Assembly (NCBI RefSeq): GCF_021869535.1
Contig: NW_026262712.1
Location: forward strand, 115,568,001 to 115,632,000
From: Mytilus californianus
Taxonomy: Eukaryota
Reading direction: 5' to 3'
DNA: 64,000 nt
Made by a program: the position numbers and the translations under genes. The notes beneath the pieces were generated by a model that saw only the letters and a program-made list of their open reading frames with translations, was not told the origin of the DNA and searched no databases. Positions 17,691 to 56,631 of this stretch are shown here, in pieces (the stretch's first letter is position 1; every line of letters begins with the position of its first letter).

Positions 17691-17793
17691 ACATCACCTT
17701 TTCGAATTGTCATTTCAGTAAACCTTTTTTTTTTATTCAATGAAGCATGTGCCATACGAAAGCATAAGGCCTTCTTTGCTTTTTCTATTCTAG

Positions 17794-19329: not shown

Positions 19330-19625
19330 TGTATATAAAAGGGTCGCTACTTACAAGTAAACTGTTGAACCAAAGATTCTTTATGGTTAAGTTGAAGTCA
19401 TCTCTGTACCAATTTAACGAACACCGTGATGGTTTGGTCCTGACATTTTTGTGTCGCACATTATTTTCTTCTCCTTTCCTTCGTATCAACGCATGCGAAT
19501 GTTTATCAAAGTTTTACTTGTCGTGAGGAAAAAGGGGATGCCCCTGGTGGATCAAGAACTTAACCCTTACCAGAGTTTATGGGTTCATTCCCTTTCTTTT
19601 TATATCTTGCGTTGATCAGTGTCTT
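19330..19625 (+). mobile_element. 3' end relic of a Penelope-like element
   Basis: GSLLTSKLLNQRFFMVKLKSSL resembles the PLE RT thumb seen at ~47590-47690; followed by a decayed version of the 3' segment also present at 27240-27660. Confidence 0.6.
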
Positions 19626-19659
19626 GTTTTTCGCATTGTGTTTTGCAATCTATGATTTT

Positions 19660-20780
19660 TTGCGGAATGTATTGTGTAAGGTTTCTGTTCAATCTTTAAT
19701 ATTTTTGCGGAATGTATTGTAGAATGTTTTTTTGTCCAGCCTTAAGGTCTTCTAGGTTTCTAGAAATGTTTTGTGTAATGATTTCTGTTCAGTTTTTTAG
19801 GTGTCAGTGATATGTGTTGTTGGAAGTTTTCTGTCCAGCCATTAGATTTCTTGAAATGTTTCGTGTATTGTTTCTATGTCAGTCTTTAAGTTTTCGTGAA
19901 ATGATTTGTAGACTGTTTTCTGTCCAGTCTTTAGTTTTTGGTGAAATGTTTTGTAGAAAGTTTTCTTCCCAGTCTTTATATTTCAATGAAATGTGTCGTG
20001 GACTGTTTTCTGTCCAGTCTTTAGGTTTTCTTGGAACGTTTTGTGGACTATTCTCTGTCCAGTATTTAGGTTTCAGTGAAATGTTTTGTGGAATGTTTTC
20101 TGTCCAGTCTATAGGTTTCCTTAAGTGTTTTGTGGAATGTTTTCTGTTCAGTCCTTAGTTTTCAGTGAAATGTGTTGTAGACTGTTTTCTGTCCAGTCTT
20201 CAGATTATAGTTAAATGTTTTGTGGAATGTTTTCTGTCCAATCTTTAGATTTCAGTGAAATATTTTGTAAATTATTTTCTGTCTAGTCATTAGGATTCTT
20301 GAAGTGCTTTGTGTATATTCTCTGTCTAGTTTTAAGGTTTCCTGAAGTATTTTATGTATTTTGTCCGTTCAGTCTTTGGGTTAACTGAGGTTTTTTGTTG
20401 GATGTTTTCCGTCCTATCTTTAGATTTCAGTGAAATGAATTGTAGACTGTTTTCTGGCCAGTCCTTAGGTTTCCTGAAGTGCTTTTGTATTTTTTTGTGT
20501 CCAGCCTTCAGATTTGCTGAAGTGTTTAGTGTATTGTTTTTACTCCAGTCTTAAGATTTCAGTGAAATATTTGTGGTATGTGGAACCAGCATTTCAGTTT
20601 CTTTCTGTTTAATGCTTTATTGCCTATTTTTCGTGCACTCTCTATGTTTCGATGAAAAGGTTTGTTGTCTGTTACTGTCCAGTCTTTAAATTTTCACGAA
20701 ATATTTTATGGACTGTTTTAAGGCTTTCGTGAAATGATTTGTAGACTGTCAAGTCTTTAGGTTTGTGGAAGGTTTTCGGT
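19660..20780 (+). repeat. ~45-bp minisatellite (TGTCCAGTCTTTAGGTTT...TTTTGTGGAATGTTTTC)
   Basis: Period 45 (e.g. 20011, 20056, 20101); the reverse-complement array is at 54300-55060. Confidence 0.9.
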
Positions 20781-23700
20781 TCAGTTTTTAATTTTTCAGC
20801 GTATTCTTAAGTAATAGGATAACTATATACATTGTTAACGTTGTACATGTCTGCCTGGTAGTGTTCATCTGACATTGACCGCATTTGAATGGTTCACTGG
20901 TAAATGTAACTTTTGATGGTTAATATAAAAAAGAAGATGTGGTATGATTGCCAATGAGACAACTCTCCACAAGAGACCAAATGACACAGAAATTAACAAC
21001 TATAGGTCACCGTACGGCCTTCAACAGTGCGCAAAGCCCATATCGCACAGTCAGCTATAAAAGGCCCCGAAATGACAATGTAAATTAAGTCTGTTTCTCA
21101 GGCATTGTAAACAAAAAGTCAACTTTATTTGGTGTATGGAATGATTGTTTTGTATACATATATAAATATGAGGAGATGATGTATGATTGCCAATGAGACA
21201 ACTATCCACCAAAGTTCAAATAAAGTGGATGTAAGCAATTATAGGCAACCCTACGGCCTTCAACAATGAGAAAAACCCATACCGTATAGTCAGCTATAAA
21301 AGGCCCCGACATGAAAAATATGAAACAATGCAATTGAGAAAAATAACGGCCTAATTTATAACAAAACAATTAACGAAAAACAAATATGACAAACATGAAA
21401 CAACGACAACCACTGAACTACAGGCTCCTGACTTGGGACAGGCACACAAAGAATGTGGCGGGGTTAAACATGTTTGTGAGCGCTCAACTCTCACCCTAAC
21501 CTGGGACAGTTGTGTAGCAGCATAACATAAGAACAAACTATAATAATCAGTTGAAAAAGGCTTAACTCATCAGATCGATACAAAGAAGAAAAACATCAAA
21601 CATAATCAAAGACCGGACGTGGAAGGGTATTTATCCATCCCTTATCCCTTACAACAAAAACTTTGATCTGAACTTTACCTCATTTCCATGGTTAAAATGC
21701 AAGCGTTACGTTTTCTTGAGTATGTTCGTTTTGTCAGATACTATAAGTAATATGTTAACTATATTTGGTTAAAGGATTGATTGTAAGGCGTATACGTCCG
21801 TATAGGGGGCATCTGACTTTGACTTCATTTATATTGATTATTGATAATGTTATTGTTATGTAACGCTTGTAGTATAACCTTTTGTTTAAGACTGAGAACA
21901 TAAATTCAATCGTCCTCAATTAAGCGGGCGATACATATCGACGTGTGCACACTTGATATGTGAAAGCTTGACAATCGGTTAAACTGGGTAGGACAAGGGT
22001 TAATACGTGAAGGTGTTACACTCTCTTTCTTTTGGGTGTAACTCTGGATATGGGTTTGATTTCGAAGGCTTCACAATCTGTTTAATTTGGCTGTTTAGTA
22101 GGGTCAAGGGTTTGTCAGAAAGTTGATGAACCAGGGTTATGTCAAAGAACGTATCGTTCTTTTTCTAAAAACAATAAACGGAAAACAAATATAACAAACA
22201 GCAACCAACGACAACCACTGAATTACAGGTTCCTGACTTGAGACAGACACATTTAGCTTATGATAGGTTTTAACATGTTTGTTAATGTTCAACCCCCTAT
22301 AAAAATAAGGAAATTTAGTATGTTTGCCAATGAGACAACGATCTAAGCCGTTTAGTTTGGAAAAAGGTTTGAAATAGACTCATCTTAGATACAAAGATTG
22401 AAGTGAAGGCTATACAATCTGTTTATTCCCCATATGATTTTGTAAACGAAGGTTTGATAGTCAGTAGGCGCTACAGTAGTCATCATATAAATGATATGTA
22501 TATAGATATCAGACGAAAAAGTACTAAACTGAGGGAATGTGATTATATGTATATAAATGATAAAGTATGTATCGAAGAGTTGTGACATATATACATATAT
22601 ATATGTCTTTTAATGTCACTTATTAAATGGCAAAATTAAAAGCTCAAACACATCAAACGGTTGAAACAACTTACACATTCCTGACTTGCTAGAGGCATTT
22701 CCTTATGTAGAAAATGTTGGATTAAACATAGTTTTATAGCTAGCTAAGCCTCTCATTAGTATGACAGTCGCATAAATTTCCATTATATTGACAACAATCG
22801 GTGAACAAAACAAACAGACATTATTTTTACTATTTATTATTTCCCGTTTGAATGGTTTTACACTAGTAATTTTTTGGGCCCTTTATAGCTTACTGTTCGG
22901 TGTGAGCCAAGGCTCCGTGTTGAAGACCGTACTTTGACCTATAATGGTTTACTTTTTTAAATTTTGACTTGGATGGAGAGTTGTCTCATTGGCACTCATA
23001 CCACATCTTCTTATATCTATTATAGGTATAAATGTCAAAAATTGGGGTACAGCAGTCAACATTGTGTTATAATCTTAATCACTATAACTTGAAACAAACA
23101 ACTATGTCAACAAAGAAAAACAAAATGACATATAAAACTCTATAGACAAGGAAAATGATTAAGAATTTATCGAAGAGTTTATATCTTTATACATATCTAT
23201 ATGTCGTTCAATATCACTATGTAAGTATGTGTGTGTATTCTTGGAAGTGAGACAGAAATGTAAGCATATGTTCAGTGGTTGTCGTTGATTCATGTCTGTC
23301 ATATTTGTTTTTTCGTAAACTGTTTTCTTATAATTTAGGCTGTTAGTTTTCTCCAATGAATTTTTCATATTTGTCATGTCGGGGTCTTTTATAGCCGACT
23401 ATACGGTATGGGGTTTTCTGATTGTTGAAGGCCGTACAGTTGCCTATATTTGCTTTCATCCACTTCATTTGAACTTTGGTGAATAATTGTCTCATTGGCA
23501 ATCATACGACATCTCCTTAACTTTATATACATGTTACAAACATTTATACAACTGACAACACATGAATATAACCATGACATTTCCTTTGTCATCTGAAAAT
23601 ATATTCAAACCTATAGAGCGATTTCTTGTTCCATTACAACTATTTACAGATTGAAAAAGGTATTTTATAGTACATCTTAAGATATAATTTGTTGTTAAAT

Positions 23701-23802
23701 TCTACATAAAATATGTTTTTTCAAAATATATCGGTTCTTTGAAACAATTACCTAATGATAATGCAAGAGTAAGATATTCTTAAAACATGTGTTTATCCAG
23801 AA

Positions 23803-24909
23803 TTAGGTAAATTTTAAATAGTCTTGTAATGTTGTTGGTAAGGGCAAGTCTACTATACTAGATGGAGAGCAAGTCCTCAGAATCGCTGCTCGACATATTA
23901 CCATCAAGTTTAGGCGAGGAACTTGAAAGGAAGCATATTTTGTTGAAAAATTCGGATTCCAGATTTGTAATTCTGAATCGCACAGAGAGAAAATAGGCAC
24001 AATAGTTTCTACGTTTTGATTGAAACACTTTTCATCCTTGAGTAAAGGCGACATGTCCTTACAGGAACATATTATTAAATTCACAATACTATTGGTGTTT
24101 TTGTCTCCAGTAATGAAGCAATATGCTAATACATCTTTACTACGACTTGCAATTAGTTTGCAACTGTTGTTTCCGTTATAAGATTTGCATTGTATATCTG
24201 GAAATTTTATATCGGATTGTTTATACCACTTTACTTTGTTATTTGTCACATTATAACCCCTTTTCATGTTTTTGAAATACAAATGTTTTAAGCATACAAC
24301 TGAACGATTCGAATTTCCATGTATTAGTGCAATAACTGAGCAAGGATAACTTGGATGAAAAACAAGATTTACCCCATCTCTGTCTGGGATCATCGAATCA
24401 TATGTTCTCTCTTCAGTCATCGACTGTTCTGATATTGAATACCAAACATAACAATATCTAGGCGATGCTTCCATAGGACATCTGAATAGAAACATGTCTA
24501 AATCTGGAGATATCAAGCATTTTAATGGTTCTTTTAAAGGGTTAATATGTCTCCACCAATCAAATGTACATACATGACAATCAACAAAATGAAATGTTTC
24601 ATTTGCTGAGTTGAAAATCATTAACATGACATCAGTACTAGTCCATTCAACTTCCAACCGATACTGAAATACATATACTGGAAAACTATATCCAATGCAT
24701 AACGGTTTTTCAAAAAATATCTGACCTCTTAACCTTACAGGAAGTTTGTATTTCTTAACGATTGTTTGTTCGTGTTCCAAAGATACAGTGGCGCGTACTG
24801 GTCCATTGAAGTGAATAGTACGAAAGTAGTGGTCATCAAACTCACTTCTGATCAACTCATTCCCAGTACACATCAAAAGTGTTGTGTCAACTATCTTTGT
24901 TGTATCCAT
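23803..24909 (-). CDS. Intronless SOCS-box protein (368 aa) with an uncharacterised N-terminal domain; putative Elongin BC-Cullin5 substrate receptor
   Basis: Longest ORF in the window; C-terminal NLMVICRAAILRTCSPSSIVDLPLPTTLQDYLKFT matches the BC box (xLxxxCxxxI) and Cul5 box (LPxP). The inverted paralog is conserved codon-for-codon. Confidence 0.88.
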   Translation of the reverse strand: MDTTKIVDTTLLMCTGNELIRSEFDDHYFRTIHFNGPVRATVSLEHEQTIVKKYKLPVRLRGQIFFEKPLCIGYSFPVYVFQYRLEVEWTSTDVMLMIFNSANETFHFVDCHVCTFDWWRHINPLKEPLKCLISPDLDMFLFRCPMEASPRYCYVWYSISEQSMTEERTYDSMIPDRDGVNLVFHPSYPCSVIALIHGNSNRSVVCLKHLYFKNMKRGYNVTNNKVKWYKQSDIKFPDIQCKSYNGNNSCKLIASRSKDVLAYCFITGDKNTNSIVNLIICSCKDMSPLLKDEKCFNQNVETIVPIFSLCDSELQIWNPNFSTKYASFQVPRLNLMVICRAAILRTCSPSSIVDLPLPTTLQDYLKFT

Positions 24910-27239
24910 ATTGTATCCACCATATAGGTTATATCAATTATCTCTACTTTATTATTTTTACTCTGAAACAATAGAGTTTTAAAAGATTTATGCGTGTCAT
25001 TTAATCATAGATGACCAGTATTTTGTAAAGTTCAATTCGCGTTCAGTATACATTCGGGACATATTTTACTGAGACTGAGTTTGAAAAGCGGCTGATAAAT
25101 ACATTATCAGGAGACGCGTACTTTGCCGAAGCATCTGGTCTTGTTTTTGAAACAAATAAAAGGAAAGTACGAAAGTATGAATCAAAGTATTATAACAACA
25201 TAAAAAATAATCTCTAGGGTGTTATAAAGAAATGCCTGTACCAAGTCAGGAATATGACAGTTGATCCATTCGTTTGATGAGTTTGAGCTTTTGATTTTGC
25301 AATTTGATAAGGACTTTCCGTTTTGAAGTTTTCTTTGAGTTCGGTATTTTTGTTATTTTCCACATTTTAATTTTCTTTCTTTTGTCTGGTCCATAATTAT
25401 AACTACGGAAGCCGTACATAATTACCACATGATTTTTTCCAATATGGCCCTATCCAGATTTCGTACATAACATTTAATGTAAAGAATATATTGGACACAC
25501 TGATATTATATCGCACATTTAAAGGTTATATTGATAAATTATAAAATATAACGACGTAAATGTAACACTCTGGAAACTCAACGGACTTTTGTACGTACTT
25601 TAAGACTTCATATAATTATAATTAATGTAATTATCAAATCTTGAGCTGAAACTTGTTGTGGTGTATATAAACAAAAAGTTTTTTTTATGTATTAAGTGAA
25701 AACCCTGGTTGGAATCACTAACAAAAATTGCTTATAAATAACTAAAAATGTATTTGGAGCGTAAGGAGAATATCTAAAAGTGCTATCTATGTGTAATCAG
25801 AATTAATTTTAAAAGGCAAAATCGTTTTGTTTGTAATGGTTAATGCTCTTCAACTTCGTACTGTTTTTGGCCTTTTTATCGTTTTTGAGTCGAGCGTCAC
25901 TGATGTGTCATTTGAAGACAAAACTCGCGTCTGGCGTATAAATATTTAATGCTGGTATCTATGACGAATTATTTCATATACATGCATCATATTGTTTATG
26001 AAAAAGATTCCTTTGAAACATTTTCATTTTTTAAGTGTAATCTAATATCCTTATTTGGAATTTGAATCCAACATTGGGTTTGAAACTTCTTTTCGGATTT
26101 TGATTCAAAAACAGGTTTTTAATCTAATGGATTGATTGTTTGTTGTTGCTTAATATCCAGTGGGAAGTACTTTTATATATTCGAGACGAGAACATATAAA
26201 CAATTAATGGTCCGTGACACAGTTATCGTTTTTTGATTTTCGTTGTCTACAAATATAGTCCCTACTGTGAACAGTGTATTAGTTTCAATTTTTTTCATAC
26301 CCCTTCCAAATTTATTTCTTCATGTGTTATGCCTCAAAAAGTAAGTAGGGGGATGAAATTACACTGTACAAAAATTTTGGTCCTGAATTTTAAAGTAAAG
26401 TAAATAGTGATTTGGTCCAGGTGAAAAAAGGTTAACAATTAATATGTCTGAAGTTTCAAAAGAATTCAAGACCTCCTTAACATAAAATTGTCCATATTTT
26501 GAGTTAGAGCTGATGAAGTTTTCTATAATTTTGATATAATTTGTCCTAAACGTAGTACACCACACTGTAAAAATATTATTGAGAAAGCGCAGGTGGGATT
26601 TTTTTTTAATTTTCATTTATTGTCTAAAAGAAATGCACTACGAAATAACTGCGTTATCGGGCCTAATACAAGAGATAGGTTCTGCAAAGTAGATCGACCG
26701 GGATGAAAGGCAAATATTTGGACTGCCACTGGGAAATGAGGGTATGTCCCTCCAACAGACCCCCCCCCCTAGAATTGTTGCAAGGCCTAGGGTTTTTAGT
26801 GTGTAGAAAGCGCGGGACTCTTTTCACTAGGCATCGGAATAAGTTTCCCTATCCAACCAAATGTGGCTTTGTATTTATACATCCCGCTAAACCGACGCCT
26901 CACTTTAAAACGGTTCTTACAGCAAGACTTGATAAATCTAGGGATGACTGTATCGCTAAACCCTATATAGATAAAGAGACGTTGTATGATTGTCAATAAA
27001 AGAAATCTCTCCACCAGAGACCAAATGACTGATATTAGCAACTATAGGTCACCGTACAGCCTTCTACAAACTAAAACCGATATCGAAAGGCCCCGACATG
27101 TACCTACGGGTTCTAAAATCAACATAACTGAAAAAATTTGGATATGATATTCCATAAATAATTAGTTTAGGTAAGTCAAACTACCAAAACAAATTTTTGT
27201 AACACAAAATAAAGTAAAGGGATTAATTAAATTATGGTT

Positions 27240-27930
27240 ATTATATCCCTGTAATACATATATAACGTTCGTTGAAATCTATAACAAACCACAAACATGG
27301 GCATAGCAAACGAGTTCTGTAAGATGAGGTCAAAGGAACATCACAGTAAAAAAAAGGAAAAGAAAAAATTCCTGATGACGTAAATTTTGGCATTTGTTTC
27401 CTGTTTGAAAGAGAGGCGAAAGCTATCAAATGGACAGGCAAACTCATATGATGAAAACAAATTAACAACGCCATGGCTAAAAAAGAAAACGACCAAAAGA
27501 CAACCAACAGTATACAAAACACAACATAGAAAACTAAAGACTGAGCAACACGATCACCACCAAAAATCCGGGTTGATCTCAGGTGCCCCGGAAAGGTACG
27601 CAGATCCTGCTCCACATATGGCACCCGTTCTTTCGCTCATGTAAGTACAAACCCGGTGATATATCTAAATCTATGACAGGTCGTTTATTGCTCTGTACAT
27701 TAGATTGATTTATAATAAGTTCATCATGGTAAATACCAGCAGTGAATTTAGAGAATACTTTATTATTTAACGAAAAAATATCTGCAAGGTCACGGAAGGT
27801 GATGAATTGATCAATTAAAAGATCAATTAAATGAAATTTATTAGCATTTTTACTAGGTTTAGCCATAATATGTGATTCAAAACGATACACGAACAAGTCT
27901 GCTATTAAAGGGCATTATCGGTCGGCATTC
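27240..27930 (-). mobile_element. Penelope-like RT relic plus its 3' terminal segment
   Basis: The minus strand gives (P)LIADLFVYRFESHIMAKPSK...FRDLADIFSLNN...IY..EL; followed by the repeat that translates spuriously as MPYVEQDL..., fragments of which also lie at 12655-12860, 31320-31420 and 40790-40900. Confidence 0.7.
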
Positions 27931-30900
27931 TTCGGAGGTCTTCTCTATGGTTAATTAGATGGCATCTAGTCTAAAATGCACACACAGTGCTGATCCATTA
28001 AATATAACGAGTCTATGCATTGTAAATTGTTTCTTTTGGAGTTTTTGCAATTTGGATCTACGTTTTAGTATGTTATAAAACATTGCATATGAGAATTGAG
28101 TCAAATCGGGGAACATTAAATATAATGCCCCTTTAATTATCTCATTACACTTCAATAAAAATGAAAGATTGCTCCATTACTAAATCAAAAAATAATGTAT
28201 CTAAACTAGTCTTTACCGATACGAAAGCAACGTTGATTCTAGTTATTACCTTCGAAACAATATCATATTTTATTCAGGTGGAATTATTTTGATTCTAGAT
28301 TATAAAACAAAACAAAAGCTATAAGAATAGTACAAAGATTCATAAGATGTTATCCTGGTTTGTAAACGTTAAATTAGAGATACTTAGAACATACTCGCGC
28401 ACCTGCTCCTTCAATGGAAATTCAGTATTTTCCTCCTATTTTTCATATCGTTTTCATTTCATTTTCGCCAAAAAAATAAATCGTTGTTTTGCTTCAGTTT
28501 ATAGGTCTAATACGAGGGTCGTATTAGAATTTATTTAACTGAGCATTTAAGTGAGAATATACTTATTTCTCATACATTACTGTGAGTCCTACGTATAGCA
28601 TTGTAAGTGTTGCTTTATTTGAGGTGGCAAGATGAACATGATTAAACCAGAGACAAACAGAGGAACTTAATCCGTATGTGTTGACAACATGTACAGATTA
28701 TCCGATGTATTGAAGAATAGAGACGTGTCTTGTACTTAGACCAGGCCATTGGTTTTTCGTTTGAATTATTTAAAATTTTTACATATTGGGGTGTTTAATA
28801 GCTTATTATTTTATTTTTATAATGTTTTATATTGATTTGTTTTAGTCATTTTGAAGTTAGCAGAGTCTTGACGTTAATAATATTCAACTTCAAAATTCAA
28901 CGTTTAATTAATTTCATTCACAAATCCTGATTAATGTGCTTCGGGCATTCAGTCGTGACTCATTTTAGAAATTCTTGTTTTGGACTGCTAGTTTAAAACA
29001 TGATGATTATCACTTACTAAGCACATGTTTTACATACATTTTTCACAATTTAGAAACATCAAATCCAGCAATTTCATTGTAAAACACCTCTTTAATACCA
29101 TAATTATCATTTCTACTTTTTATAACAATTGGCAATACACTATGATCAATTTTATACAACACTGTGAAAAGGTATTTAAGAAATTGATTATAAATAACAG
29201 GAAATATAGGGGAAACCTGATCAAGGTTTCAATGACCCCCCCAAAAAATAATAAATAAATATATACAAACAAGAAAGAGCAATTAAAAAACGAAAAAAAA
29301 AAACAACAATATAACGAAACAAAAACAAACACAAATTACAATCAATCAATGATAAATCCCCCGAAACATAATAAAGGAGCATTTAAAGTTCAGCATACGG
29401 TCCTCAAAACAAGAATGATATATGTACAATATGTTAAGGTCACACTAATCGCACTGAATCCAGACAAATAGCAAATTGATAAAGACTACCACAGAGCTGT
29501 CCAATAAACACTTAAATGAACCACAATGAGAAAACACATACATTTATATCATCAGTCAACATTAACGAGGTTCCTCATTTAAAAGAGGCACATGTACATG
29601 AACATGTGGTAGGGTGAACCTACTTGTTTTAAACACTCCATTTTACGCCTCTTAAATTTCTTAACAGATGTCCTGTATGAATTGATGATTCTTTGTCCAA
29701 ACGGTTCTATCGCAACATTTATGATTTGAAAACCGAGTATAAATGTCTGTAACATGAAATTAACTTTTTATTAAATGGATCGGAGTTGTTTTGTCTAAAG
29801 AGTATAACGTCAAACGGTATTACTTTTCAACAAATACGTCTACCGCTATATGATGAAACCCACAGTCATGTATTTTTAAATGTTTCACCAATTTGTCTTG
29901 TTTTAGAGACTTAAGTTTAAGCGGCAGTTAGATTTTTTTTACATTTGAAAACAGTATGTTAAACTAACTGGGTTAGGCCAGTAAAACGTAACTGGTAAAT
30001 TCAATACAATGTATATTAATCTTTGATAAATAATAATTTAACAAGTCAATTATCAGTACGCTATTTTTAATATGAATAGACGCGTTTTTGTTATTTGATG
30101 CTTATGAAAATATGATACTGGACGTTAGGCAAATATAATCAATATATAAATAAATCAATAATCTTGGAAACTTCAAATTTACACTTTTATTTGTGTGGAA
30201 AATCATTTATATCTTAAAATGACCGACAGAAAAAAACAAACAATCGATTGTTCTTATCCGTCATCAAGTGTTTAGTGGAAATACAAATTCTCCAAACATT
30301 GACGTTTTGAAATGTGAGACACGTATGGAAAGAATTGTTGGTTTTCCCCACATGCGGATTTAGTTGGGGTATATTAATCTACATATATAGATAATGTATC
30401 TATACATGCTCTACTCCTAATGTTTTTAATTAGGGCCCTTCTTTTTAAAATCCTGGATCCGCATCTGTTCTCCGACTTATCAAAGGACATTTTGGCAAAC
30501 GTCCGGGGATCTCTGTTCATATTGTAGCTTTTTGGTACAAAATTCTGGATGACTGGCTCATGTCTTGGTTTCTTGGCTTAATAGTCGGGTCTCTTATATA
30601 ACCATTCATAAGAACTGATGCGACCTTAATAAATTTGCTATAAATAGACGTTTTTGGCTAAATTTTTGTCGATCATTCACATTTTCCGGGTCGAGCTCCC
30701 ATTTCTTAAAACAATCATTATGAGTTGTTATAACGTCAGATTATCCTCCTACCTCATCCTCAATGAAATATCAAATGGTTGTCCAAAAAATTATCAGGTT
30801 TGTTTTATATGAAGGAATATGGCTTTTTATTCAGTCATCTTCCAGATAATACCACATCAATATTTTGGTAACTACTCGATTTTAGTTATGTATCTATCAA

Positions 30901-46649: not shown

Positions 46650-48600
46650 GAGTTAAATAAAGGTATCAGTAGTATACCGCTGTTCAAAAGTCATAAATCG
46701 ATTGAGAAAACAAATCAACTATAAGAGGAAAACAACAGAACAACAGAAACACTGAAGTGCAAAAAAAAAAAAAAAAACGCCAATGCAACATACATAGAAA
46801 CGAACTATTTGATAATAACTGCCATATTCCTGACTTGGTACAGGACATTTTAAGAAAAAATGGTGGGTTGAACCTGGTTTTATGGCTAGCCAAACCTCAC
46901 GCTTATATGGCAATGTTAAAAATACCGTTAAAATGACAACATTACGTGACAGGAATACAGTACAAATAAATGCAAGAACACTCAGGACAGAGAAATACAT
47001 AAATAAATAATATAATAGTACCTTTCGACATGTAAACCACAGCATAACAACGAACACCTTAAATTAATTTACGACAGTACACAAATACAGCATAACACGA
47101 ATGTATCAACGCCACAAAGAGTGACGTCACAGGTAAATTTCTAAAAATTGAATATAAAATCGGGATTAAGTTTGTAATGGTGTTATTTGATGTATTTTCT
47201 AACAGTTTACAAGAATATTAATATAGAATTGTGTTAGTAATGGTGTAACTAATTGTATTTTCTAACCAAGTCGGTTTTTCTTCTAAATCAAACCCTGTAA
47301 AAACAAATAAATCCTGTGCATATAGTTGCTTTAAACCAAAGATCATACAAATGAACTAGGTGATTAATTATCTTTACTTTTACATACATATAGAAAATAA
47401 AAATATAATTAAAACCACAAACGATAAGACATAAAACAATATCGAATCAGAATTACAAATAAAACATCAGTACTAACTATATGAATACTTAAAAGTCCAA
47501 ATGACGTATATGGTAAACCACAATATAAGACGTGGTAAAATGTAGTTAGTTAGTTTAGACACAGAGACATCGTATAGATCAACCAATTCGTGATGGTGTC
47601 CATAAAATTTACGGAGTGTCATTTTTAATCTTTCCTCCTCATAACTTTGTTGGAGCAGTTTCTGCTTAAGGAGCACACTCCTGTATATGAAGTCTGTATA
47701 GTTTGAACATGCACGAGCATAACGTATCAATTGAGATATGTAAACACCATACGATGGGGCAGAGGGTATGTTACTGCTGAGAAATGGGAAATTGATAATT
47801 GGGAAGTTGAAATCGTCCCGTTTGTCATAGATTTTAGTGTGAAGTCGTCCATCTGTGTCAATATTGAGGAAAAGATCAAGGTATGAAGCAGTCCTTCTAG
47901 TATCAGTAGTATCCTTAATTTCAAGTTCACTGGGATATATGAGATGTAAGTACTGACTGAAATATGGGTTATTCAGTGATAGGACATCATCAATATATCT
48001 GAAAGTAAAATTAAAGAATTTCGCAAGGTGCTTTTTCTTTTTGTCTTTTAGAAGGTTCTGAATGAATTCTCCTTCATACAATTACAAAATACAAATCGGT
48101 CAGTAGAGGTGCACAATTAGTACCCATCGGAATACCGACTGTCTGTTGAAATATCTATCCTCCAAACTCAACAAATATATGGTCGATAAAAAAGTCCAGC
48201 ATTTTGATAATATCATCTTCAGTATATTTTCTGGTAGAATCAGTGTGGTTCTTCACAAAATAAGAATTATTATAACCCAAAACAAGAAATTTATATCTAC
48301 GATTCCCATTTTTATAGAAAAAGCTCTGTTTAATGAGATGGTGAAGTCGATCTTTCAATTGAGCATGGGGAATAGTAGTGTAAAGAGTAGAAAAATTAAA
48401 GGTCTTAATGTTGCTTCAAATGTAGAGATTGTGATCTAAGATTTAGCAGTAGATCTTTAGAATTTTTGAGAATCCACATCTGATTAACACCACTGGTTGA
48501 ATGTATCTGATCACAATATGTTTAAAGGCCATCTTTTACTGAATAGTAGTCAGCACTTTAGAAATATGTTTAGTCGAACACCTTGATGATCCAGCTTTGT
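46650..48600 (-). mobile_element. Best-preserved Penelope-like retroelement (RT, 5'-truncated)
   Basis: FDFSTLYTTIPH, IKMLDFFIDHIFVEFGG, GIPMGTNCAPLL, FTFRYIDDVLSLNN, YLDLFL, LHTKIYDKRDDFNF, YGVYISQLIRYARACS (ORFs 47473-48081 and 48155-48358). Confidence 0.92.
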
Positions 48601-51290
48601 ATCGTTAAGCCCTTTTCAACTGATTTTTATAGTCTGTTTATATGTTGTACTGTTACATCAATGTCCCAGGATAAAGGGAGGGTTCGGCGCCCGCTAACAT
48701 GCTAAACCCCGCGTTCTGTGTGTGCCTGTCCCAAGTCGACAGCCTGTGATTCAGTGGTTGCTGTTTGTTGCTGTGTGTCGTATTTGTTTTTCGTTCATTG
48801 TATTTTTACATAAATCAGTTCGGTTTTTTTCGTATGAATTGTTTTAAATTTGTCATTTCGGGGCCTTTTATAGCTGACTTTGCGGTATGGGTTTTGCTCA
48901 TTGTTGAAGACATTACGGTGACCTATAGTGGTTAACTTCTATGTCATTTGGTGGCTGGTGGAGAGTTGTCTCATTGGCAATTATACCACATCTTCTTATT
49001 TTTATACTTAATAGGCGTTTTATACTGTGCTTGGGTGGAACTTGGATTTTATAATCGCTTGGATCAATACTGTCCAGTGCCCCATTTGTGGCTTCTAGTA
49101 TTTCATCAAATGTAAAGCAAGTGTACATATTTTTTGCTTCAAATGTAAATAGGGAGCAGTCTCGTGGGGTTTTATATTTTTATTCGAATTAATAAAACTT
49201 GACGTATCTTTTATATATGTATTTTAACAAGTGGAACAATAAAATAATCTATATAGTGTCCATTGTTGTGAAGAGGCGTTCTGCAAAGTAATAAAATTAG
49301 TCTGTCCTGAATTAAATTTTCTAGTCTAGTAACTTCGTTTTTTTCAGGTATTTTATGTATTTTAGGCAAAATATAGAACTTTCCAACTTAAATTTTAATT
49401 CTTTATTGATGTTTTCTTTCAAATATGAAATATCAAAATATTCTGTCAATATGATTGTCAACAATTTTTTTTATAATGTATATTATGTAATTATCTTTAC
49501 TCTGCACGTAAATAGTTGTCTTTGTTTTGCGGCTATGTTGATTTAAGAACCCGTACATTAAGATACGATCTATGTAAGCTTATTATTATGTCTTGTCGGG
49601 GACTTTCGGTATCGGTTTTGCTCATTGTTGAAGGCTGCACGGTGACCAATAGTTGGTAGCATCTATGATTGGTCTCTGTTTGAGAGTTGTCTTATTGGTA
49701 ATCATACCTTATCTCCGTATTTTATATAAGGTGAAGACATATAGTCATCCCTGGAATTATCCAGTTGGGCAGTAAGAATCGTTGTTAAAGTAAGGCGTCA
49801 GCTCGGTTTTGCGGGATATATAAATACATAGACACAACTGGTTGGAAAGGGAAACTTAAATCCGATGTCTGGTGAAGAGAGTGTACATGCACGTTCAAGA
49901 ACTCATGCAACACGAGGGGTTTGTTGGTAGGATAAATTGTCTGTTCTATCCATCATAATCTCATTTCCCAGTGGCAGTCCAAATTATTGCCCTTCGTCTC
50001 GGTCGATCTACCTGGCAGAACCTACCTGCCGTATATATTGTTTATATGTTCTCGTCTTTGTTATACATTTGAATGAAGTACTTCCAACTGGATGTTAAGC
50101 ATCAACAATCAATCAATCCATCAGATTATAAAAAAAACTATTTTGGATTCAGATTAAAAAATAAGTTTACATTTAAAAAACTAAATATTTCAAAGGAATG
50201 TCTACATAAACAATAAAATACATGTATATGAAAAGTTGCAAATCAAACTTTCTTTCTTTTTATCTAATTTAACATATAGAGCGCTTTCAAATATTCTCTT
50301 CATCATCTGAATATTTTTTCAGTTACTTATAACCAATTTTCCAACCAGGTTTTATAACTTAATTCATAAGAAACTTTTGTGTTTATATACATGAATACAA
50401 GTTCAGATCAAGACATTGTTAATTGAATAAACTGTATTTTTATTAAGTATTACAGTACGTTTCAAAGTCCGTTGTGTTTCCAAATTTTTTTCGCTACATT
50501 TACGCTATTACATTATATATTTTTTTCAATATGACCTTTAATAGTGTTATATTTTTTTACACCCCAAAAAATTGTTTGTCCAATATATGTTTTACTTGAA
50601 GTATTATGCACAATGTTCTGAATCAGGTTAGGGCCACATTGAAAAAGAAATGTCGTAATACCGACATCCTATGTTCTGCTTCCGTAGTTATGCATTTTGA
50701 CCAGACAAAGGAAATAAAATTAACAAAGCAGGATAAAATACAAAAATTAACAAAGCAGGATAAAATACAAAAATTAACGTCGGCCCGCCTTATTTCCAAT
50801 GCCAAGATGGTATGCCATGATGGTTTTAAACGGAAATCTGACAGTATTTATTTGTTTTGGTCTATATCATCATTGTAGAAACAAAACTTTAAATTTTCAC
50901 CCTTCCTTAAATATACATTTGACTTCAGTATATGTTTTTGTGTTTCCGTTTCTTACACGAAATGGTTTCTAATTCGGTCAAGAAATATTAAACAAAAACA
51001 GCAAGAAATACCCAATAGATTATGTGTTTTATTGTTATAATACTTTCGTTTTTTCTTACGTTTCCTTTATTTGTTTTAAAACAAGACCGGATGCTTCGAC
51101 AATGTAAGAATTTCCTGATTATGCACCTATCATCCGCTTTTTAAACTCAGTTTCAGTCAAATATGTCCCGAATGTAAATTGAACACGAACTGAACTTTAC
51201 AAATATGAGTAACCTTTCAAAACTATATTGTTTTAGGGTGAAAATTGATAAAGTAGAGATAACTGATACATCATATATGGTGGATACAAT

Positions 51291-52401
51291 ATGAATACAA
51301 CAAAACTTGTTGACACAACGCTTTTGATGTGCACTGGGAATGAGCTGATCAGAAGTGAGTTTGATGACCACTACTTTCGTATTATTCACTTAAAGGGGCC
51401 GGTATGTGCCACTGTTAATTTATCTGCGGAACACGAACAAACAATCGTTAAGGAATACAAACTTCCTGACAGGTTAAGAGGTCAGATATTTTTTGGGAAA
51501 ACATTATGCATTGGGTATAGTTTTCCAGTATATGTATTTCAGTATCGATTGGAAGACGAATGGGTTGATGTCATGTTGATGATTTTAAATTCAGAAAATG
51601 AAATATTTCATTTTGTTGATCACCATGCGATGATACATGAATGGTGGAGAGAAACTAATCCTTTAAAAGAACCATTAGAATGTTTGATATCTCCAGATTT
51701 AGACATGTTTCTATTCAGATGTCCTATGGAAGCATCGGCTAGCCTCGGTTTGGATTGGTTTTCAATATCTGAAAAGTCTATGTCGACGACTGGAGAAAGA
51801 ACAAAAATTTCAAATCTTAAGGCTAAAGATGAAATAAGTTATATCTTTCATCCAAGTCATCCTTGTTCAGTCATTTCAGTGTTACATGTTAACTCTGGCC
51901 ATTTACGTATAGGCTTAAGACATTAAAATTCTAAAAACATGGATGTGGTTTATAGGATTTCAGGTGGGTGGTTGTGTAGACAATATGGACAACCTGATAT
52001 AAAATTTCCAGATATACATAGCAAATGTAACATTGTCAAAAACAGTTGCAAACTAATTGCAAGTCGTAGTAAAGATGTATTAGCACAGTGCTTCATTACT
52101 CAAGATAAACACACCAATGGTATTGTGCATATAATCATATATTTCTCTAATGACATGTCGTCATTACTGAATGAGGAAAAGTGTTTAAGTCAAAGCGTTG
52201 AAACTATTGTGCCTTAATTCTCACTGTGCGATTCAGAATTACAAATCTGGAATCCGAATTTTTCAACAAAATATGCTTCCTTTCAAGTTCATCGTCTAAA
52301 TGGTTATGTGTCGAGCAGCGATTCTGAGGACTTGCTCTCCGTCTAGTATAGAAGACCTGCCCTTACCAACGTCATTAAAAGAATATTTAAAATTTATCTA
52401 A
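51291..52401 (+). pseudogene. Pseudogenised paralog of the SOCS-box gene
   Basis: Colinear with 23803-24909; in-frame TAA at 51924-51926 and 52215-52217, and a 5-nt deletion at ~52300 that frameshifts the BC box. Confidence 0.92.
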
Positions 52402-53209
52402 TTCTGAATGATCACTTTTTTAAGAATATGTTACTCTTGCATTGTCATTAAATAACTTTTTTTCAAATGAAAAAAATATGTTTTAAAACTATCTATTTGG
52501 TGTAAAACGTAACAAAAATTGATATCTTAAGATGTAATAAAGAATGTCTTTTTCAATCTGTATTTAGTTTCAATGGAACATAACATCTCCCTTTAAGTTC
52601 GAATTAAATTTGCAAATAAAAAAATGAGAAAGAAAATTTTATTGCTACATATCAAGTTGATATTCTGGTGTCATTTATTCACATTTTGTCAATTGTATAC
52701 GTGTTTTTAACATATATGCTTACGTTTCTTTATACCTTTAAGAATACACACACATACTTACTAACATAGTCACATTAAAGGCATATAGATATGCGTATAT
52801 GTATAAACTCTTCGATGCATACGTAATCATTCATATACTTATAATCGTATTCCAGCAGTTCCATCTTTTTCCACTAATATCAATATATATATCCTGTATA
52901 AAAAAAGTAGAACAAAAATACCATACTACACGGAAAATTCAAAACGAAAAGACAAAACCATGTGGGGAATAAACAGATTGCCATGCCTCACATTCATACC
53001 TTCGTCCAAACTGAACGTTCTGGGAGTTGAACATTGACAAACATGCTACAGCCTGGCAAATGTTAAATATGCCTGTCCCAAGTCAGGTTGTTGTTGGTAG
53101 ATGTTTGTCATATAAGTCTTTTGTTTATTCTTTAGCAGAACACAGGCCGATGGTATTCTCATAAGATTTTGTTTCGTTTCACATTTTATTCATGTCGGGT
53201 CTCTTATAA

Positions 53210-53515
53210 ATTACGATACGGAATGTTTTGCTCATTGTTAAAGGTCGTATATCCATGTTTCGCGGTCTTTATGACTTATGAAATATATTGCTTATTGTTT
53301 AAGGTCGTATATCCATGCTTCGAAGCCATCATAACTTATGATACGGAATGTTTTGCTCATTGTTGAATATCGTATATCCATGTTTCTTGGCCTTTCTGAC
53401 TTAAGATACGGAATGTTTGGCCCATTGTTACAGGTCGTATATCCGTATTTTTTAGCCTTTATAACTTAAGATACAGAATTTCTTGCACATTGTTGAAGGT
53501 CGTATATCCATGTTT
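53210..53515. repeat. ~64-bp tandem array x ~4.7, derived from an internal piece of the common interspersed repeat
   Basis: GATAC(G/A)GAAT at 53215, 53340, 53405, 53470; the unit contains GCTCATTGTTGAAGGTCGTA. Confidence 0.85.
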
Positions 53516-54299
53516 TTGATTTCTGGTATATAGAAGTCTCACTTCATTCCATATCTCCTGTACATTTTTATGTACTAGTATACAAACACTCAAATAGAGC
53601 AGATTGCAAAGCTTTTATTAACAAACATATGACCGTAATGAATAGCTCAATTAAACACTTAATGAAGCCTTTGCAATCAAAACTATATCCAAATTTCACA
53701 CCCCAATAACGGGAATTGTCAAGCCTTCACAAATTAACCCTTATCCAGCCCAATCAAATAGATAGTCAAGCTTTCATATAACAAAAGTGATTACGCCGAA
53801 AAGTCTCGCCTGCTTTAATGAGCACGATTGATGGTATGTTGAAAGTGTTAAAAAAAGGTTGTACCACAAGCATTACATGAAACTAACATTTTCAATAATC
53901 CATGTAAGTGGAGTTAATGTCAGATCGTCCTGCCAGACGGACATGAACGTCTTACAATAATTCCATACACAAAATAAAGTTAACATATTACTTATAGTAT
54001 CTGACTAAACGGACATAACAAAGAAAACGAAACGCTGACCTTTCAACCATGGAAATGAGGTAAAGGTCAGATGAAACCCATCAGACAGACATGTACAACA
54101 ATGTATATAGTTGTCCTATTACTAAAGGATTTCTTGGAAACTTAATGACTGGACAGAAAACAGTACATAAAGGATTGCGCGGAAACCTAAAGATTCGACA
54201 GCAACCGAACACAGACCTTTTCATCGAACCATAAAGACCCATAATAGTAAAAAAGCATTAAATAGAAACTCAAAGACTAAACAGAAAACATTTCACATC

Positions 54300-55060
54300 A
54301 AATGACTGGACGGAACACAATACACAAAATACCATAGGTAACATAAAGACTGGACAGAAAACAGTCCACCAACCTTTTCACGAAAAATCTCAAGGCTGGA
54401 CAGAAAACATTCCACAAAACATATCACGAAAATCTAAAGGCTGGACAGAAAACATTTCACAAAACATTTCGCGAAAACCTACAGGCTGGACAGAAAACAG
54501 TTCACAAATCATTTCACGAAAACCTAAAGGCTGGACAGAAAACAGTCCTAAAACATTTTACTGAAATCTAAAGGCTGGATAGAAAACAGTTCACAATACA
54601 TATCACGAAAACCTAAAGGCTGGACATAAAAACACACCTAAAACATTTCAGGAAAACCTAAAGGCTGAACAGAAAACAGTTCACAAAACATGTATATCAC
54701 GAAAACATAAAGGCTTGACCGAAAACAGTCCACAAAACATATCACTAAAACCTAAAGGCTGGACAGAAAACAGTTAACAAAACATTTCTGGAAAACCTAA
54801 ATGCTGGACAGAAAACAGTCCACAAAACATTTCAGGAAAACCTAAAGGCTGGACAGAAAATCAGTCCACAAATCATTTCACGAAAATATAAAGGCTGGAC
54901 AGAAAACATTCCACAAAACATATCACGAAACCTAAAGGCTGGACAGAAAACATTCCACAAAACATATCACAAAAACCTAAAGGCTGCACAGAAAACAGTC
55001 CACAAACCATTGCAGAAAACATTCCACAATACAATTATGGATTGGACAGAAAACATTATG
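54300..55060 (-). repeat. ~45-bp minisatellite, inverted counterpart of 19660-20780
   Basis: A(A/C)GGCTGGACAGAAAACA at 45-nt spacing (~54391, 54436, 54481, 54526). Confidence 0.9.
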
Positions 55061-56631
55061 CAAAACACTATGCGGTACAACTCTACACTGAGCAACGCAA
55101 GATCAACAGAAAAGGGAGTGAACTCATATACTCTGGAAGGTTCCCAATTTCTGATTTACTAGTGGCACTCATCGTATTATTCACGACACAGTCGCATTCT
55201 TTGATACGATATATAAATTACACTCATGCGATATATAAAATTATATATATTACGCTCATTAGATATAAATATACTTCACTCAATAGATACATAAATTACA
55301 CTCATTAGATACATAAACTACACTCATTAGATACATAAACTACACTCATTAGATACATAAATTACACTCATTAGATACATAAACTACGCTCATTAGATAT
55401 AAATATACTTCACTCAATAGATACATAAATTACACTCATTAGATACATGAACTACACTCATAAGATACATAAATTACACTCATTAGATACATAAACTACA
55501 CTCATTAGATACATAAATTACACTCATTAGATACATAAATTACACTCATTAGATATATAAAATCTGGTTGTATCAATATTTCAAGGGTTTGTCTTTCATA
55601 CTTAAACTTTGTTTGCGGGGTAAGGATAAAGCAAACAAAAGGAATATGATTATAAATAAAATGTTATCAAATAATATACAACCTGATTATAAACTCAACG
55701 ATAAGTTTTTAGCATGAGATTTGACCTTAGTAGGATTTGGCTATTAGTTTAGGTCCCTTTTGGTCAGACAGCTGTTAGCGTCTAAAGGCTGGACAGAAAA
55801 CATTCCACAAAACATATCACAAAAACCTAAAGGCTGCACAGAAAACAGTCCACAAACCATTGCAGAAAACATTCCACAATACAATTATGGATTGGACAGA
55901 AAACATTATGCAAAACACTATGCGGTACAACTCTACACTGAGCAACGCAAGATCAACAGAAAAGGGAGTGAACTCATATACTCTGGAAGGTTCCCAATTT
56001 CTGATTTACTAGTGGCACTCATCGTATTATTCACGACACAGTCGCATTCTTTGATACGATATATAAATTACACTCATGCGATATATAAAATTATATATAT
56101 TACGCTCATTAGATAAAAATATACTTCACTCAATAGATACATAAATTACACTCATTAGATACATAAACTACACTCATTAGATACATAAACTACACTCATT
56201 AGATACATAAATTACACTCATTAGATACATAAACTACGCTCATTAGATATAAATATACTTCACTCAATAGATACATAAATTACACTCATTAGATACATGA
56301 ACTACACTCATAAGATACATAAATTACACTCATTAGATACATAAACTACACTCATTAGATACAAAAATTACACTCATTAGATACATAAATTACACTCATT
56401 AGATATATAAAATCTGGTTGTATCAATATTTCAAGGGTTTGTCTTTCATACTTAAACTTTGTTTGCGGGGTAAGGATAAAGCAAACAAAAGGAATATGAT
56501 TATAAATAAAATGTTATCAAATAATATACAACCTGATTATAAACTCAACGATAAGTTTTAAGCATGAGATTTGACCTTAGTAGGATTTGGCTATTATTTT
56601 AGGTCCCATATGGCCAGACAGCTGTTAGCGT
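54932..56631. repeat. Near-identical 850-bp tandem duplication (54932-55781 / 55782-56631), each copy containing a 22-bp minisatellite
   Basis: Same sequence at offset 850 with only a handful of substitutions; ATAAA(T/C)TACACTCATTAGATAC arrays at ~55210-55560 and ~56060-56410. Confidence 0.93.

What the first reader, a model, noticed from the sequence alone, without database searches (positions are those of the whole stretch)
19480..55210. A ~35-kb ancient inverted duplication (decayed giant palindrome) organises over half of the window
Reverse-complement blocks occur in strictly nested order: 19480-19620/55060-55210; 45-bp arrays 19660-20780/54300-55060; 21950-22100/53640-53790; SOCS gene 23803-24909/51291-52401; 26090-26200/50035-50150; 26670-26960/49740-50020; 28200-28450/44400-44640; 28560-28740/43860-44040; 29020-29640/42480-43085; 29770-30200/40920-41560; 30990-31240/40510-40770; 31870-33170/36045-36935; 33190-33520/35755-36025. 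The unpaired centre is only ~2 kb. Similarity looks roughly 70-80% by eye, so it is old and not an assembly artefact. The geometry fits a fold-back or breakage-fusion-type origin (inference). It offers an internal control for dating TE insertions, neutral decay and arm-to-arm gene conversion.
Basis: seen in the sequence. Interest (0 to 1): 0.7.

Follow-up and report, generated by a model that had tools for sequence, protein, structure and literature searches.

The report
Decayed 36-kb palindrome in a mussel
A 36-kb stretch of a mussel chromosome is a real, very old mirror-image duplication that copied one SOCS-box gene; it is unusually easy to read, but it is a known and fairly ordinary kind of rearrangement.

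Summary
Window 19480-55208 holds a colinear antiparallel chain of about 20 blocks: about 9 kb aligned, 72-75% identity, non-coding K2P 0.30. The chain scores 5014-5056, against 446 for the best direct chain and 85-849 for controls. The paired blocks are mostly unique in the 1.65-Gb genome, which is Mytilus, probably M. californianus. The SOCS-box gene occurs only twice in that genome, once per arm.

Arm A's gene is intact. Arm B's copy has two stops and a 5-bp deletion, but it stayed under purifying selection until recently.

M. coruscus shares arm B and its outer junction. M. edulis and M. trossulus have one gene copy between the same neighbours, a galaxin-like gene and an iGluR gene. The duplication is therefore 3-5 times older than the californianus/coruscus split and about as old as the split from the M. 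edulis complex.

Both flanks are kept, so the origin was interstitial (fold-back or template switching), not breakage-fusion-bridge.

The 1.9-kb centre is 1.64 kb of later TE insertions plus 267 bp of other sequence.

One 3.5-kb block found only in arm B may predate the duplication. If so, the origin had two steps or several template switches.

This is a new member of a known kind, of modest interest. The scan also noted a smaller inverted duplication elsewhere in this genome.

The parts
19480..33687 (+). Arm A (14.2 kb), the copy at the ancestral position next to the galaxin-like gene. About 63% of it aligns to arm B.
   Evidence: Chain of blocks. The outer end of homology was read directly. 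The left flank 19346-19464 and the galaxin gene are colinear with M. edulis and M. trossulus.
35593..55208 (-). Arm B (19.6 kb), the inverted copy. About 45% of it aligns. It is longer because of arm-specific insertions.
   Evidence: It is colinear at 94-95% identity with M. coruscus locus L006 from 39250 outward and across the outer junction.
33688..33954 (.). The only part of the centre that is not TE-derived (267 bp). It includes 33694-33903, a third local copy of arm segment q (arm A 32345-32541, arm B 36617-36763).
   Evidence: 74-75% identity to both arm copies. (among the scored candidates, the overlapping arm segment matched nothing outside this locus).
33955..35592 (.). Four dispersed repeats that abut one another and fill the centre: a 360-bp satellite-like unit (33955-34314); TE1 (34317-34791, with a nested 113-bp hairpin at 34469-34581); TE2 (34795-about 35050); TE3 (35049-35592).
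   Evidence: Each has many copies elsewhere at 80-93% identity.
23803..24909 (-). SOCS-box gene copy A: intact, 368 aa, no introns, transcribed away from the centre.
   Evidence: ORF. Pfam SOCS_box E=4e-6, above the curated cut-off. Homologues of 72-74% protein identity in M. trossulus and M. edulis.
51291..52401 (+). SOCS-box gene copy B: disabled in this assembly by two in-frame stops and a 5-bp deletion in the SOCS box. The translation shows a third stop; it is out of frame, downstream of that deletion. Transcribed away from the centre.
   Evidence: dN/dS against the M. coruscus copy is 0.32, P=1.7e-4 against neutrality.
19660..20780 (.). The 45-bp minisatellite of arm A. Its partner in arm B is at 54300-55060.
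   Evidence: The same array lies downstream of the gene in M. edulis (L005 11506-12257) and M. coruscus.
31861..33687 (+). Inner arm pair, A side. Its partner is 35593-36945. K2P 0.19-0.34, similar to the outer arms.
   Evidence: Unique in the genome apart from a piece of about 130 bp.
36946..40460 (+). Block I, present only in arm B. It is a copy of a low-copy dispersed repeat of about 3 kb and carries a nested 680-bp TE (37859-38542). It is colinear, in arm-A orientation, with the DNA just upstream of the single SOCS gene in the M. edulis complex.
   Evidence: paralogues L013-L017. (loci L004, L005, L012). Gap table.
44689..49593 (.). A 4.9-kb TE-rich stretch present only in arm B (arm A has 1.06 kb at the matching place). 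It contains an RT-like ORF at 47473-48081.
   Evidence: Most of it is shared with M. coruscus, so these insertions predate that split.
26205..26665 (.). A MITE inserted in arm A only, with TAAT on both sides. The empty site in arm B is at 50034-50037.
   Evidence: about 90% identity to many copies. (junctions read directly).
54932..56631 (+). A recent 850-bp tandem duplication (99.2% identity) that straddles the outer boundary of arm B and includes a locus-specific 22-bp array.
   Evidence: M. coruscus has one copy.

Best explanation
This is an old, in-place inverted segmental duplication.

Before the event, the chromosome carried galaxin-like gene - 45-bp array - SOCS-box gene - upstream DNA - iGluR gene. 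A segment of about 12-14 kb holding the array, the gene, its promoter and the upstream DNA was then copied in reverse orientation. The copy was laid down between the original and the iGluR gene. The result is two arms with the two genes pointing outward.

The most likely mechanism is a replication or repair error that switches strands (fold-back priming or template switching) and then returns to the original template. That would explain why both flanks survive.

The event happened in the common ancestor of the window species and M. coruscus, probably shortly after that lineage split from the M. edulis complex. Since then the arms have diverged freely, to non-coding K2P 0.30. They have gained different TEs, and the centre has been filled by four TE insertions. 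Both gene copies stayed under selection for most of that time. Copy B was disabled only recently in this haplotype.

Shown: the inverted colinear homology, the uniqueness of the blocks, the shared arm B in M. coruscus, the single copy within 21-kb loci in M. edulis and M. trossulus, and the preserved flanks. Inferred: the molecular mechanism, the exact timing and the number of steps.
For: - Antiparallel chain scores 5014-5056, against 446 for the direct chain and 85-849 for controls.
- The paired blocks are unique to the two arms.
- Non-coding K2P is 0.30 between the arms and 0.057 between the window and M. coruscus.
- L006 (M. coruscus) is colinear with window 39250-64000 and crosses the junction between arm B and the flank.
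- L004 and L005 (M. trossulus, M. edulis) show iGluR - 4.4-5.4 kb - one SOCS gene - array - galaxin, in the same order and orientation as arm A with the window's flanks. L012, a second M. edulis assembly, agrees.
- Each of M. trossulus and M. edulis has only one annotated homologue.
- Synonymous divergence is A-B 0.31±0.05, A-edulis/trossulus 0.40-0.41, B-edulis/trossulus 0.41-0.43, and B(window)-B(coruscus) 0.11.
- The disabling lesions of copy B are not shared between the two species, and dN/dS between the two B copies is 0.32, P=1.7e-4.
- The centre is TE-derived except for 267 bp.
Against: - The timing relative to the M. edulis complex is not settled. The A/B/E gene tree is a three-pronged star that cannot be rooted.
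- The dS difference between A-B and A-E is only about 1.5 standard errors.
- The central third of the coding sequence shows A closer to M. edulis and M. trossulus than to B.
- Only ±10 kb around the gene could be seen in M. edulis and M. trossulus. Only arm B could be seen in M. coruscus.
- Block I (36946-40460) interrupts arm B and may predate the event, which a single simple fold-back does not explain.
- Junction microhomologies cannot be recovered at this divergence.
Confidence: 0.78

Rival explanations
1. The palindrome is older than the split from the M. edulis complex. M. edulis and M. trossulus lost arm B and the inner parts by deletion, and the low A-B distance at the gene ends comes from later arm-to-arm gene conversion.
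For: - Non-coding A-B K2P (0.30) is as large as the window-M. edulis/trossulus K2P in non-exonic flanks (0.24-0.36).
- In the central coding part, A is closer to M. edulis and M. trossulus than to B.
- Block I would then simply be a TE that entered arm B before the split.
Against: - Whole-gene dS is lower for A-B (0.31) than for A-E or B-E (0.40-0.43).
- Two separate deletions flanking block I are needed in the M. edulis lineage.
- The I-family element and its nested TE would both have had to insert in the short interval between the duplication and the split.
Confidence: 0.2
2. One clean fold-back gave a nearly spacer-less palindrome with arms 19480-33687 and 35593-55208. Every interruption, including the 3.5-kb block I, is a later TE insertion. 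The same repeat family next to the gene in the M. edulis complex is an independent insertion or a local hop.
For: - Block I is a copy of a dispersed repeat family with a defined right end at 40454-40466.
- The inner and outer arm pairs have the same divergence.
- With block I removed, the inverted copy is continuous in arm B.
- The non-TE spacer is only 267 bp.
Against: - The family is low-copy (77 first-look candidates).
- In M. edulis it sits in the same intergenic interval, in the same orientation, with a piece of the same nested 680-bp TE in colinear order. This is improbable by chance.
- The arm A gap 31424-31860 has no counterpart beside block I, so there is no clean empty site.
Confidence: 0.3
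3. A breakage-fusion-bridge or terminal fold-back origin: a broken chromosome end folded back, formed a dicentric and was healed.
For: Inverted arms with a short single-copy spacer are the signature of fold-back inverted duplications (PMC3907307).
Against: The iGluR gene distal to arm B and the galaxin gene proximal to arm A keep the order and orientation they have in M. edulis, M. trossulus and M. coruscus. There is therefore no terminal deletion, translocation or ring. The arms are 14-20 kb, not megabases.
Confidence: 0.04
4. Not a duplication of host DNA: either a large mobile element with long inverted ends, chance pairing of dispersed repeats, or an assembly fold-back artefact.
For: The region is rich in TEs, and several non-colinear inverted matches are TE copies.
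Against: - The unique blocks and the gene occur only in these two arms.
- Arm A lies at the ancestral gene position.
- 25-28% arm divergence, and presence of arm B in a second species' assembly, exclude an artefact.
- Chain scores exceed the controls more than 6-fold.
Confidence: 0.02

Closest known systems
Fold-back inverted duplications with a single-copy ('disomic') spacer (human constitutional cases, PMC3907307; yeast DSB-induced foldback inversions, PMC10622511)
   Same: Two inverted copies of adjacent host DNA separated by a short single-copy spacer. Here that is 267 bp of non-TE sequence, or a few kb if block I counts as spacer. Extra templated pieces occur near the junction: a third copy of segment q lies at the centre.
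   Different: The known cases are megabase-scale and lie next to terminal deletions, translocations or rings after a dicentric stage. This one is interstitial, has 14-20 kb arms with both flanks intact, is fixed or ancient in a lineage, and is 25-28% diverged.
Palindromic segmental duplications and ampliconic palindromes (human X/Y palindromes, from my own knowledge; mouse chr12 SD12A1, PMC13688818, seen in the search only)
   Same: Gene-bearing inverted arms around a short spacer. One gene copy per arm.
   Different: Sex-chromosome palindromes keep more than 99% arm identity through gene conversion. Here the arms have decayed at roughly the neutral rate, with no clear conversion tracts.
Replication template-switch rearrangements (FoSTeS/MMBIR, DUP-TRP/INV-DUP; from my own knowledge, not tested)
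   Same: An interstitial inverted copy is inserted without loss of the flanks. There may be several switches: the inner copy, then block I, then the outer copy.
   Different: There is no triplicated segment. Junction microhomology cannot be read at this age.
Foldback or long-TIR transposons
   Same: Long inverted arms and a short centre.
   Different: The arms are single-locus host DNA that includes a host gene. There are no other copies in the genome, no target-site duplication was seen at the ends, and arm A lies at the ancestral position.

Membership tests
Inverted (palindromic) segmental duplication | Two copies in reverse-complement orientation that are colinear over many blocks | tested here: met
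   19-20 nested blocks, about 9 kb aligned; score 5014-5056 against 446 for the direct chain.
Inverted (palindromic) segmental duplication | The copies are host sequence specific to this locus, not dispersed repeats | tested here: met
   The protein matches only the two arms. For the unique blocks the best non-self hit is the other arm.
Inverted (palindromic) segmental duplication | A single-copy state exists in relatives | tested here: met
   M. trossulus L004 and M. edulis L005 and L012 have one gene between the same neighbours. Only 21-24 kb was visible per locus.
Conversion-maintained ampliconic palindrome (X/Y type) | Arm-to-arm identity above 99% | tested here: not met
   72-75% identity, K2P 0.30.
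Breakage-fusion-bridge or terminal fold-back inverted duplication | Adjacent terminal deletion, translocation or ring, meaning the distal flank is lost | tested here: not met
   The iGluR and galaxin flanks are kept in ancestral order and orientation.
Breakage-fusion-bridge or terminal fold-back inverted duplication | A short single-copy spacer between the arms | tested here: met
   The centre is 33688-35592, of which only 267 bp is not a later TE.
Breakage-fusion-bridge or terminal fold-back inverted duplication | Inverted microhomology at the junction between spacer and duplication | not testable with these tools
   About 25% divergence and TE insertions have erased bp-level junctions.
Foldback or long-TIR transposon | Multiple genomic copies with the same ends, and a target-site duplication | tested here: not met
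   There are no other copies of the arm blocks. The sequences outside the two ends are unrelated.
Assembly artefact (fold-back chimera or haplotig) | Near-identical arms that are absent from independent assemblies | tested here: not met
   The arms are 25-28% diverged. Arm B and its junction are present in the M. coruscus assembly. A read-level test was not possible.

The most novel reading that the evidence does not exclude
The locus may record one multi-switch replication accident (MMBIR-like). The polymerase would have copied the inner segment backwards, returned to copy an older single-copy block (I), then resumed the backward copy of the outer 12 kb almost exactly where it had left off. 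That would make it a naturally fixed, datable example in a mollusc. The near spacer-less centre may then have been stabilised by four TE insertions while both gene copies were kept by selection for most of the time since.
Probability: 0.3. Interest if true: 0.45.

Novelty: new member of a known kind. Interest (0 to 1): 0.3.

Why it matters
The locus gives a clean, dated natural experiment in a mussel genome. Two copies of the same 12-14 kb have evolved side by side for 3-5 times the M. californianus/M. coruscus divergence. TE insertions can therefore be ordered as before or after the duplication, and neutral decay and indel turnover can be measured. The fate of a lineage-restricted SOCS-box gene pair can also be followed: long retention under selection, fast change in the central domain of one copy, then recent loss. 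It also shows that an interstitial palindrome can persist for a long time once its centre is interrupted. None of this opens a new class of biology.

Tried and rejected
I did not try another route.

2. Reaching the arm A side in M. coruscus through the galaxin-like neighbour. The protein search returned only an M. edulis protein. L006 stops at window-equivalent 39250, so the presence of arm A and the centre in M. coruscus is untested.

3. A 59-bp pairing at 33904-33961 / 35065-35010 looked at first like arm homology reaching the very centre. Other copies of TE2 carry the same inverted end, so I rejected it.

4. The 113-bp self-hairpin at 34469-34581 looked like a possible fold-back seed. It lies inside a dispersed repeat (TE1), and at least one other copy carries it, so I rejected it.

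5. I first took the match of M. edulis and M. trossulus upstream DNA to 39497-40210 as orthology. I then doubted it because the segment is a dispersed repeat. I then found colinear extension to 37298, including a nested-TE piece, in L012, and paralogues showing that the block is one repeat unit. It is left open.

6. Rooting the A/B/edulis-complex tree. No outgroup homologue exists among the five proteins found, and the unrooted tree is a star.

7. Homology between the arm A gap 31424-31860 and arm B or block I. None was found.

8. Whole-arm copy-number scans are dominated by high-copy TEs, because only 40 candidates are scored. I replaced them with block-wise queries.
Full report
**Is it there?**

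Yes. The window has no N and is 32% G+C. A self versus reverse-complement BLAST lists a series of inverted matches whose left coordinates rise while their right coordinates fall. Chaining them gives 19-20 strictly nested blocks.
- They run from 19504/55188 at the outside (19504 also pairs with 56056, in a recent tandem copy) to 33687/35576 at the inside.
- They cover 8.9-9.1 kb of aligned columns at 72% identity, with a chain score of 5014-5056.
- Controls with the same method score far lower. The same arms in direct orientation score 446. Either arm against 1-19000 scores 236-849. Arm A against 56500-64000 scores 85. The two outer flanks against each other score 0.
- Re-aligned block by block with MAFFT, identity is 69-84%. 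Pooled non-coding identity is 75.2% and K2P is 0.30 over 6.06 kb. The coding block has K2P 0.20 and the 314 bp upstream of the start codon 0.185.

**Is it unique sequence or repeats?**

The genome is G000, 1.65 Gb in 175 contigs, and the window is C132:115568001-115632000. This fits the published M. californianus reference of 1.65 Gb in 176 scaffolds (PMC9710001). The species assignment is an inference.
- The 368-aa protein of arm A matches only two places in the genome, one per arm.
- Block-wise DNA searches show that 28100-29700 and 32395-33690 have the other arm as their best non-self match. Only short sub-pieces (28889-29079, 32747-32877) are old dispersed repeats.
- The non-colinear matches between the arms are copies of TE families.

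**Anatomy**

Arm A is 19480-33687 (14.2 kb). Arm B is 35593-55208 (19.6 kb).

Outer boundaries. Homology stops sharply at about 19480 and 55208. Outside arm A lies DNA orthologous to the M. edulis and M. trossulus flank, followed by the galaxin-like gene. Outside arm B lies a locus-specific 22-bp array. That array, together with the end of arm B, was recently duplicated in tandem (54932-55781 / 55782-56631, 99.2% identity).

Length difference. It comes from arm-specific stretches (gap table).
- In arm A: 20709-21661, 22621-23525, 26205-26665, 27099-28156, 30218-31009 and 31318-31860.
- In arm B: 36946-40424 (3.5 kb), 44689-49593 (4.9 kb, with an RT-like ORF) and several stretches of 0.2-0.7 kb.
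- Several are demonstrable TEs. The element at 21160-21660 is 91-93% identical to its best-scoring copies, out of about 39,600 first-look candidates for the whole 7.8-kb query.
- The MITE at 26205-26665 is about 90% identical to many copies, has TAAT on both sides, and faces a clean empty site in arm B at 50034-50037.

Centre. The unpaired centre is 33688-35592.
- Of this, 33955-35592 consists of four different dispersed repeats that abut one another.
- Only 267 bp (33688-33954) is not TE. About 200 bp of that is a third, diverged local copy of an arm segment.
- At birth the spacer was therefore at most a few hundred bp, unless block I (discussed further on) counts as spacer.

**Genes**

Arm A carries an intact, intronless 368-aa ORF (23803-24909, minus strand) with a C-terminal SOCS box (Pfam E=4e-6, above the curated cut-off). 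Arm B carries its copy (51291-52401, plus strand) with two in-frame stops and a 5-bp deletion in the SOCS box. The translation shows a third stop, which is out of frame, downstream of that deletion. The promoters face the centre, so the genes are transcribed outward.

**Other species**

The protein has only four other homologues in the large protein set, all from Mytilus.
- M. trossulus (L004) and M. edulis (L005) show iGluR gene - 4.4-5.4 kb - one SOCS gene - 45-bp array - galaxin-like gene. This is the order and orientation of arm A with the window's two flanks, but without arm B.
- A second M. edulis assembly (L012) agrees. Its gene copy is decayed.
- M. coruscus (L006) is colinear with window 39250-64000 at 94-95% identity. 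That covers most of arm B, its gene copy, the junction with the 22-bp array and the iGluR gene.
- Arm B in its inverted orientation therefore predates the split of the window species from M. coruscus. That, together with the 25-28% arm divergence, rules out an assembly artefact.
- Whether M. coruscus also has arm A could not be seen.

**Dating (relative only)**

| Comparison | Non-coding K2P | Synonymous dS |
|---|---|---|
| Arm A vs arm B | 0.30 | 0.31±0.05 |
| Window vs M. coruscus (arm B copies for dS) | 0.057 | 0.11 |
| Window vs M. edulis flanks | 0.21 pooled; 0.24-0.33 in non-exonic pieces | - |
| Window vs M. trossulus flanks | 0.32 | - |
| Copy A vs M. edulis/trossulus | - | 0.40-0.41 |
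| Copy B vs M. edulis/trossulus | - | 0.41-0.43 |

- The duplication is 3-5 times older than the californianus/coruscus split. It is about 75-100% as old as the split from the M. edulis complex.
- The synonymous pattern favours a duplication after that split, but only by about 1.5 standard errors.
- The gene tree is an unrootable three-pronged star.
- The signal is mosaic. In the N- and C-terminal thirds A and B are closest. In the central third (aa 151-262) copy B is far more diverged (dN 0.35, dS 0.54) than A is from M. edulis and M. trossulus. This fits fast evolution of a putative substrate-binding region in copy B. It also fits an older origin with conversion at the gene ends. I could not decide between the two.

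**Fate of copy B**

The lesions in the window (two stops, a 5-bp deletion) and in M. coruscus (two 1-bp deletions, a 55-bp insertion) are not shared. Between the two B copies dN/dS is 0.32 (Sd 22, Nd 29). This differs from neutrality at P=1.7e-4. Copy B was therefore functional for most of its history and was disabled recently. The M. coruscus assembly is ONT-based (PMC9710001), so its 1-bp indels may be assembly errors.

**A complication: block I**

The largest arm-B-only stretch, 36946-40460, lies exactly between the inner arm pair (31861-33687 / 35593-36945) and the outer arm pair (19480-31317 / 40461-55208).
- It is a copy of a low-copy dispersed repeat of about 3 kb. Paralogues L016 and L017 are colinear over 37022-40466, and four paralogues share a common right end at 40454-40466.
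- It contains a nested old 680-bp high-copy TE (37859-38542) that paralogue L016 lacks.
- In all three M. edulis-complex loci the same family lies about 0.3 kb upstream of the single SOCS gene, in the orientation of arm A.
- In L012 it also carries a piece of the nested TE, in colinear order.
- If these copies are orthologous, which I think more likely than not, block I predates the duplication. The structure is then T-U-P1-centre-P1'-I-U'-T'. That means either two nested inverted duplications of similar age, or one event with several template switches.
- If the M. edulis copy is an independent insertion or a local hop, the simple picture holds: one fold-back plus later TE insertions.
- The arm A gap at the matching place (31424-31860) has no counterpart in arm B or in block I. 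My last own-genome search could not resolve whether it is TE-derived.

**Mechanism**

What is shown is an interstitial inverted copy with both flanks intact. That excludes a breakage-fusion-bridge history with terminal loss. In the human fold-back cases such loss accompanies inverted duplications with single-copy spacers (PMC3907307).

What is inferred is the mechanism itself. A stalled fork or a resected break primed synthesis on the complementary strand, copied the upstream DNA, the gene and the array backwards, and then returned to the original template before the iGluR gene. The third copy of segment q at the centre, and possibly block I, would be extra template switches. Junction microhomology cannot be read at this divergence. 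There is no sign of conversion-driven homogenisation as in sex-chromosome palindromes.

**Verdict**

'Ancient inverted duplication' is right, 'BFB-type' is not, and 'one palindrome' may be an oversimplification. It is a new example of a known kind of rearrangement. It is useful as a dated internal control for TE insertion and neutral decay, and as a gene-duplicate case study, but it is not surprising to a specialist. I did not test it.

**Limits**

Own-genome DNA searches score only 40 candidates, so copy numbers are lower bounds. Divergences come from BLAST-selected, MAFFT-aligned blocks and are therefore somewhat underestimated.

Noticed in passing
window 54932-56631: An 850-bp tandem duplication at 99.2% identity straddles the outer end of arm B and carries a 22-bp array that is almost unique in the genome. 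M. coruscus has one copy. M. edulis L005 has a similar array (13911-14124) on the galaxin side, which hints that the original duplicated unit reached slightly further out.
   Followed up: partly
window 19660-20780 and 54300-55060; L005 11506-12257; L006 about 12860-14100: A 45-bp minisatellite has kept its place downstream of the SOCS-box gene in both arms and in M. edulis and M. coruscus, despite about 30% divergence of the surrounding DNA.
   Followed up: no
L005 10015-11125, L012 17892-19141, L004 10001-11122, L007: The single SOCS-box gene is very diverged within the M. edulis complex. L005 and L012 are 84% identical at DNA level, dS between M. edulis and M. trossulus is 0.29, and the L012 copy is full of stops. 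This suggests old alleles or presence/absence-type variation at this locus.
   Followed up: partly
window 33955-35592: Four different dispersed repeats lie end to end, within 2-4 bp of one another, exactly at the centre of symmetry. This may be a TE landing spot, or it may reflect survival of palindromes whose centre was interrupted.
   Followed up: partly
window 33955-34314; G000 C87:9455851-9457661; L005 2619-3841: A unit of about 365 bp occurs as a single copy here and as tandem arrays elsewhere in the genome and in the M. edulis locus. It is a satellite/TE hybrid family; the 7.8-kb query that included it drew about 19,000 first-look candidates.
   Followed up: no
window 4269-5937 and 8941-10602: A direct 1.7-kb duplication at 84% identity lies left of the palindrome, in the region of the C-type lectin receptor genes noted by another finding.
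   Followed up: no
window 33038-33125 and 35374-35652: Two short self-complementary elements: an 88-bp hairpin at 95% identity inside arm A, and a 279-bp one mostly inside TE3.
   Followed up: no
window 51291-52401 vs L006 9537-11675: Copy B shows dN/dS 0.32 between the window species and M. coruscus, although both assemblies carry disabling lesions, and the lesions differ. This means recent independent loss, or errors in the ONT-based M. coruscus assembly.
   Followed up: partly
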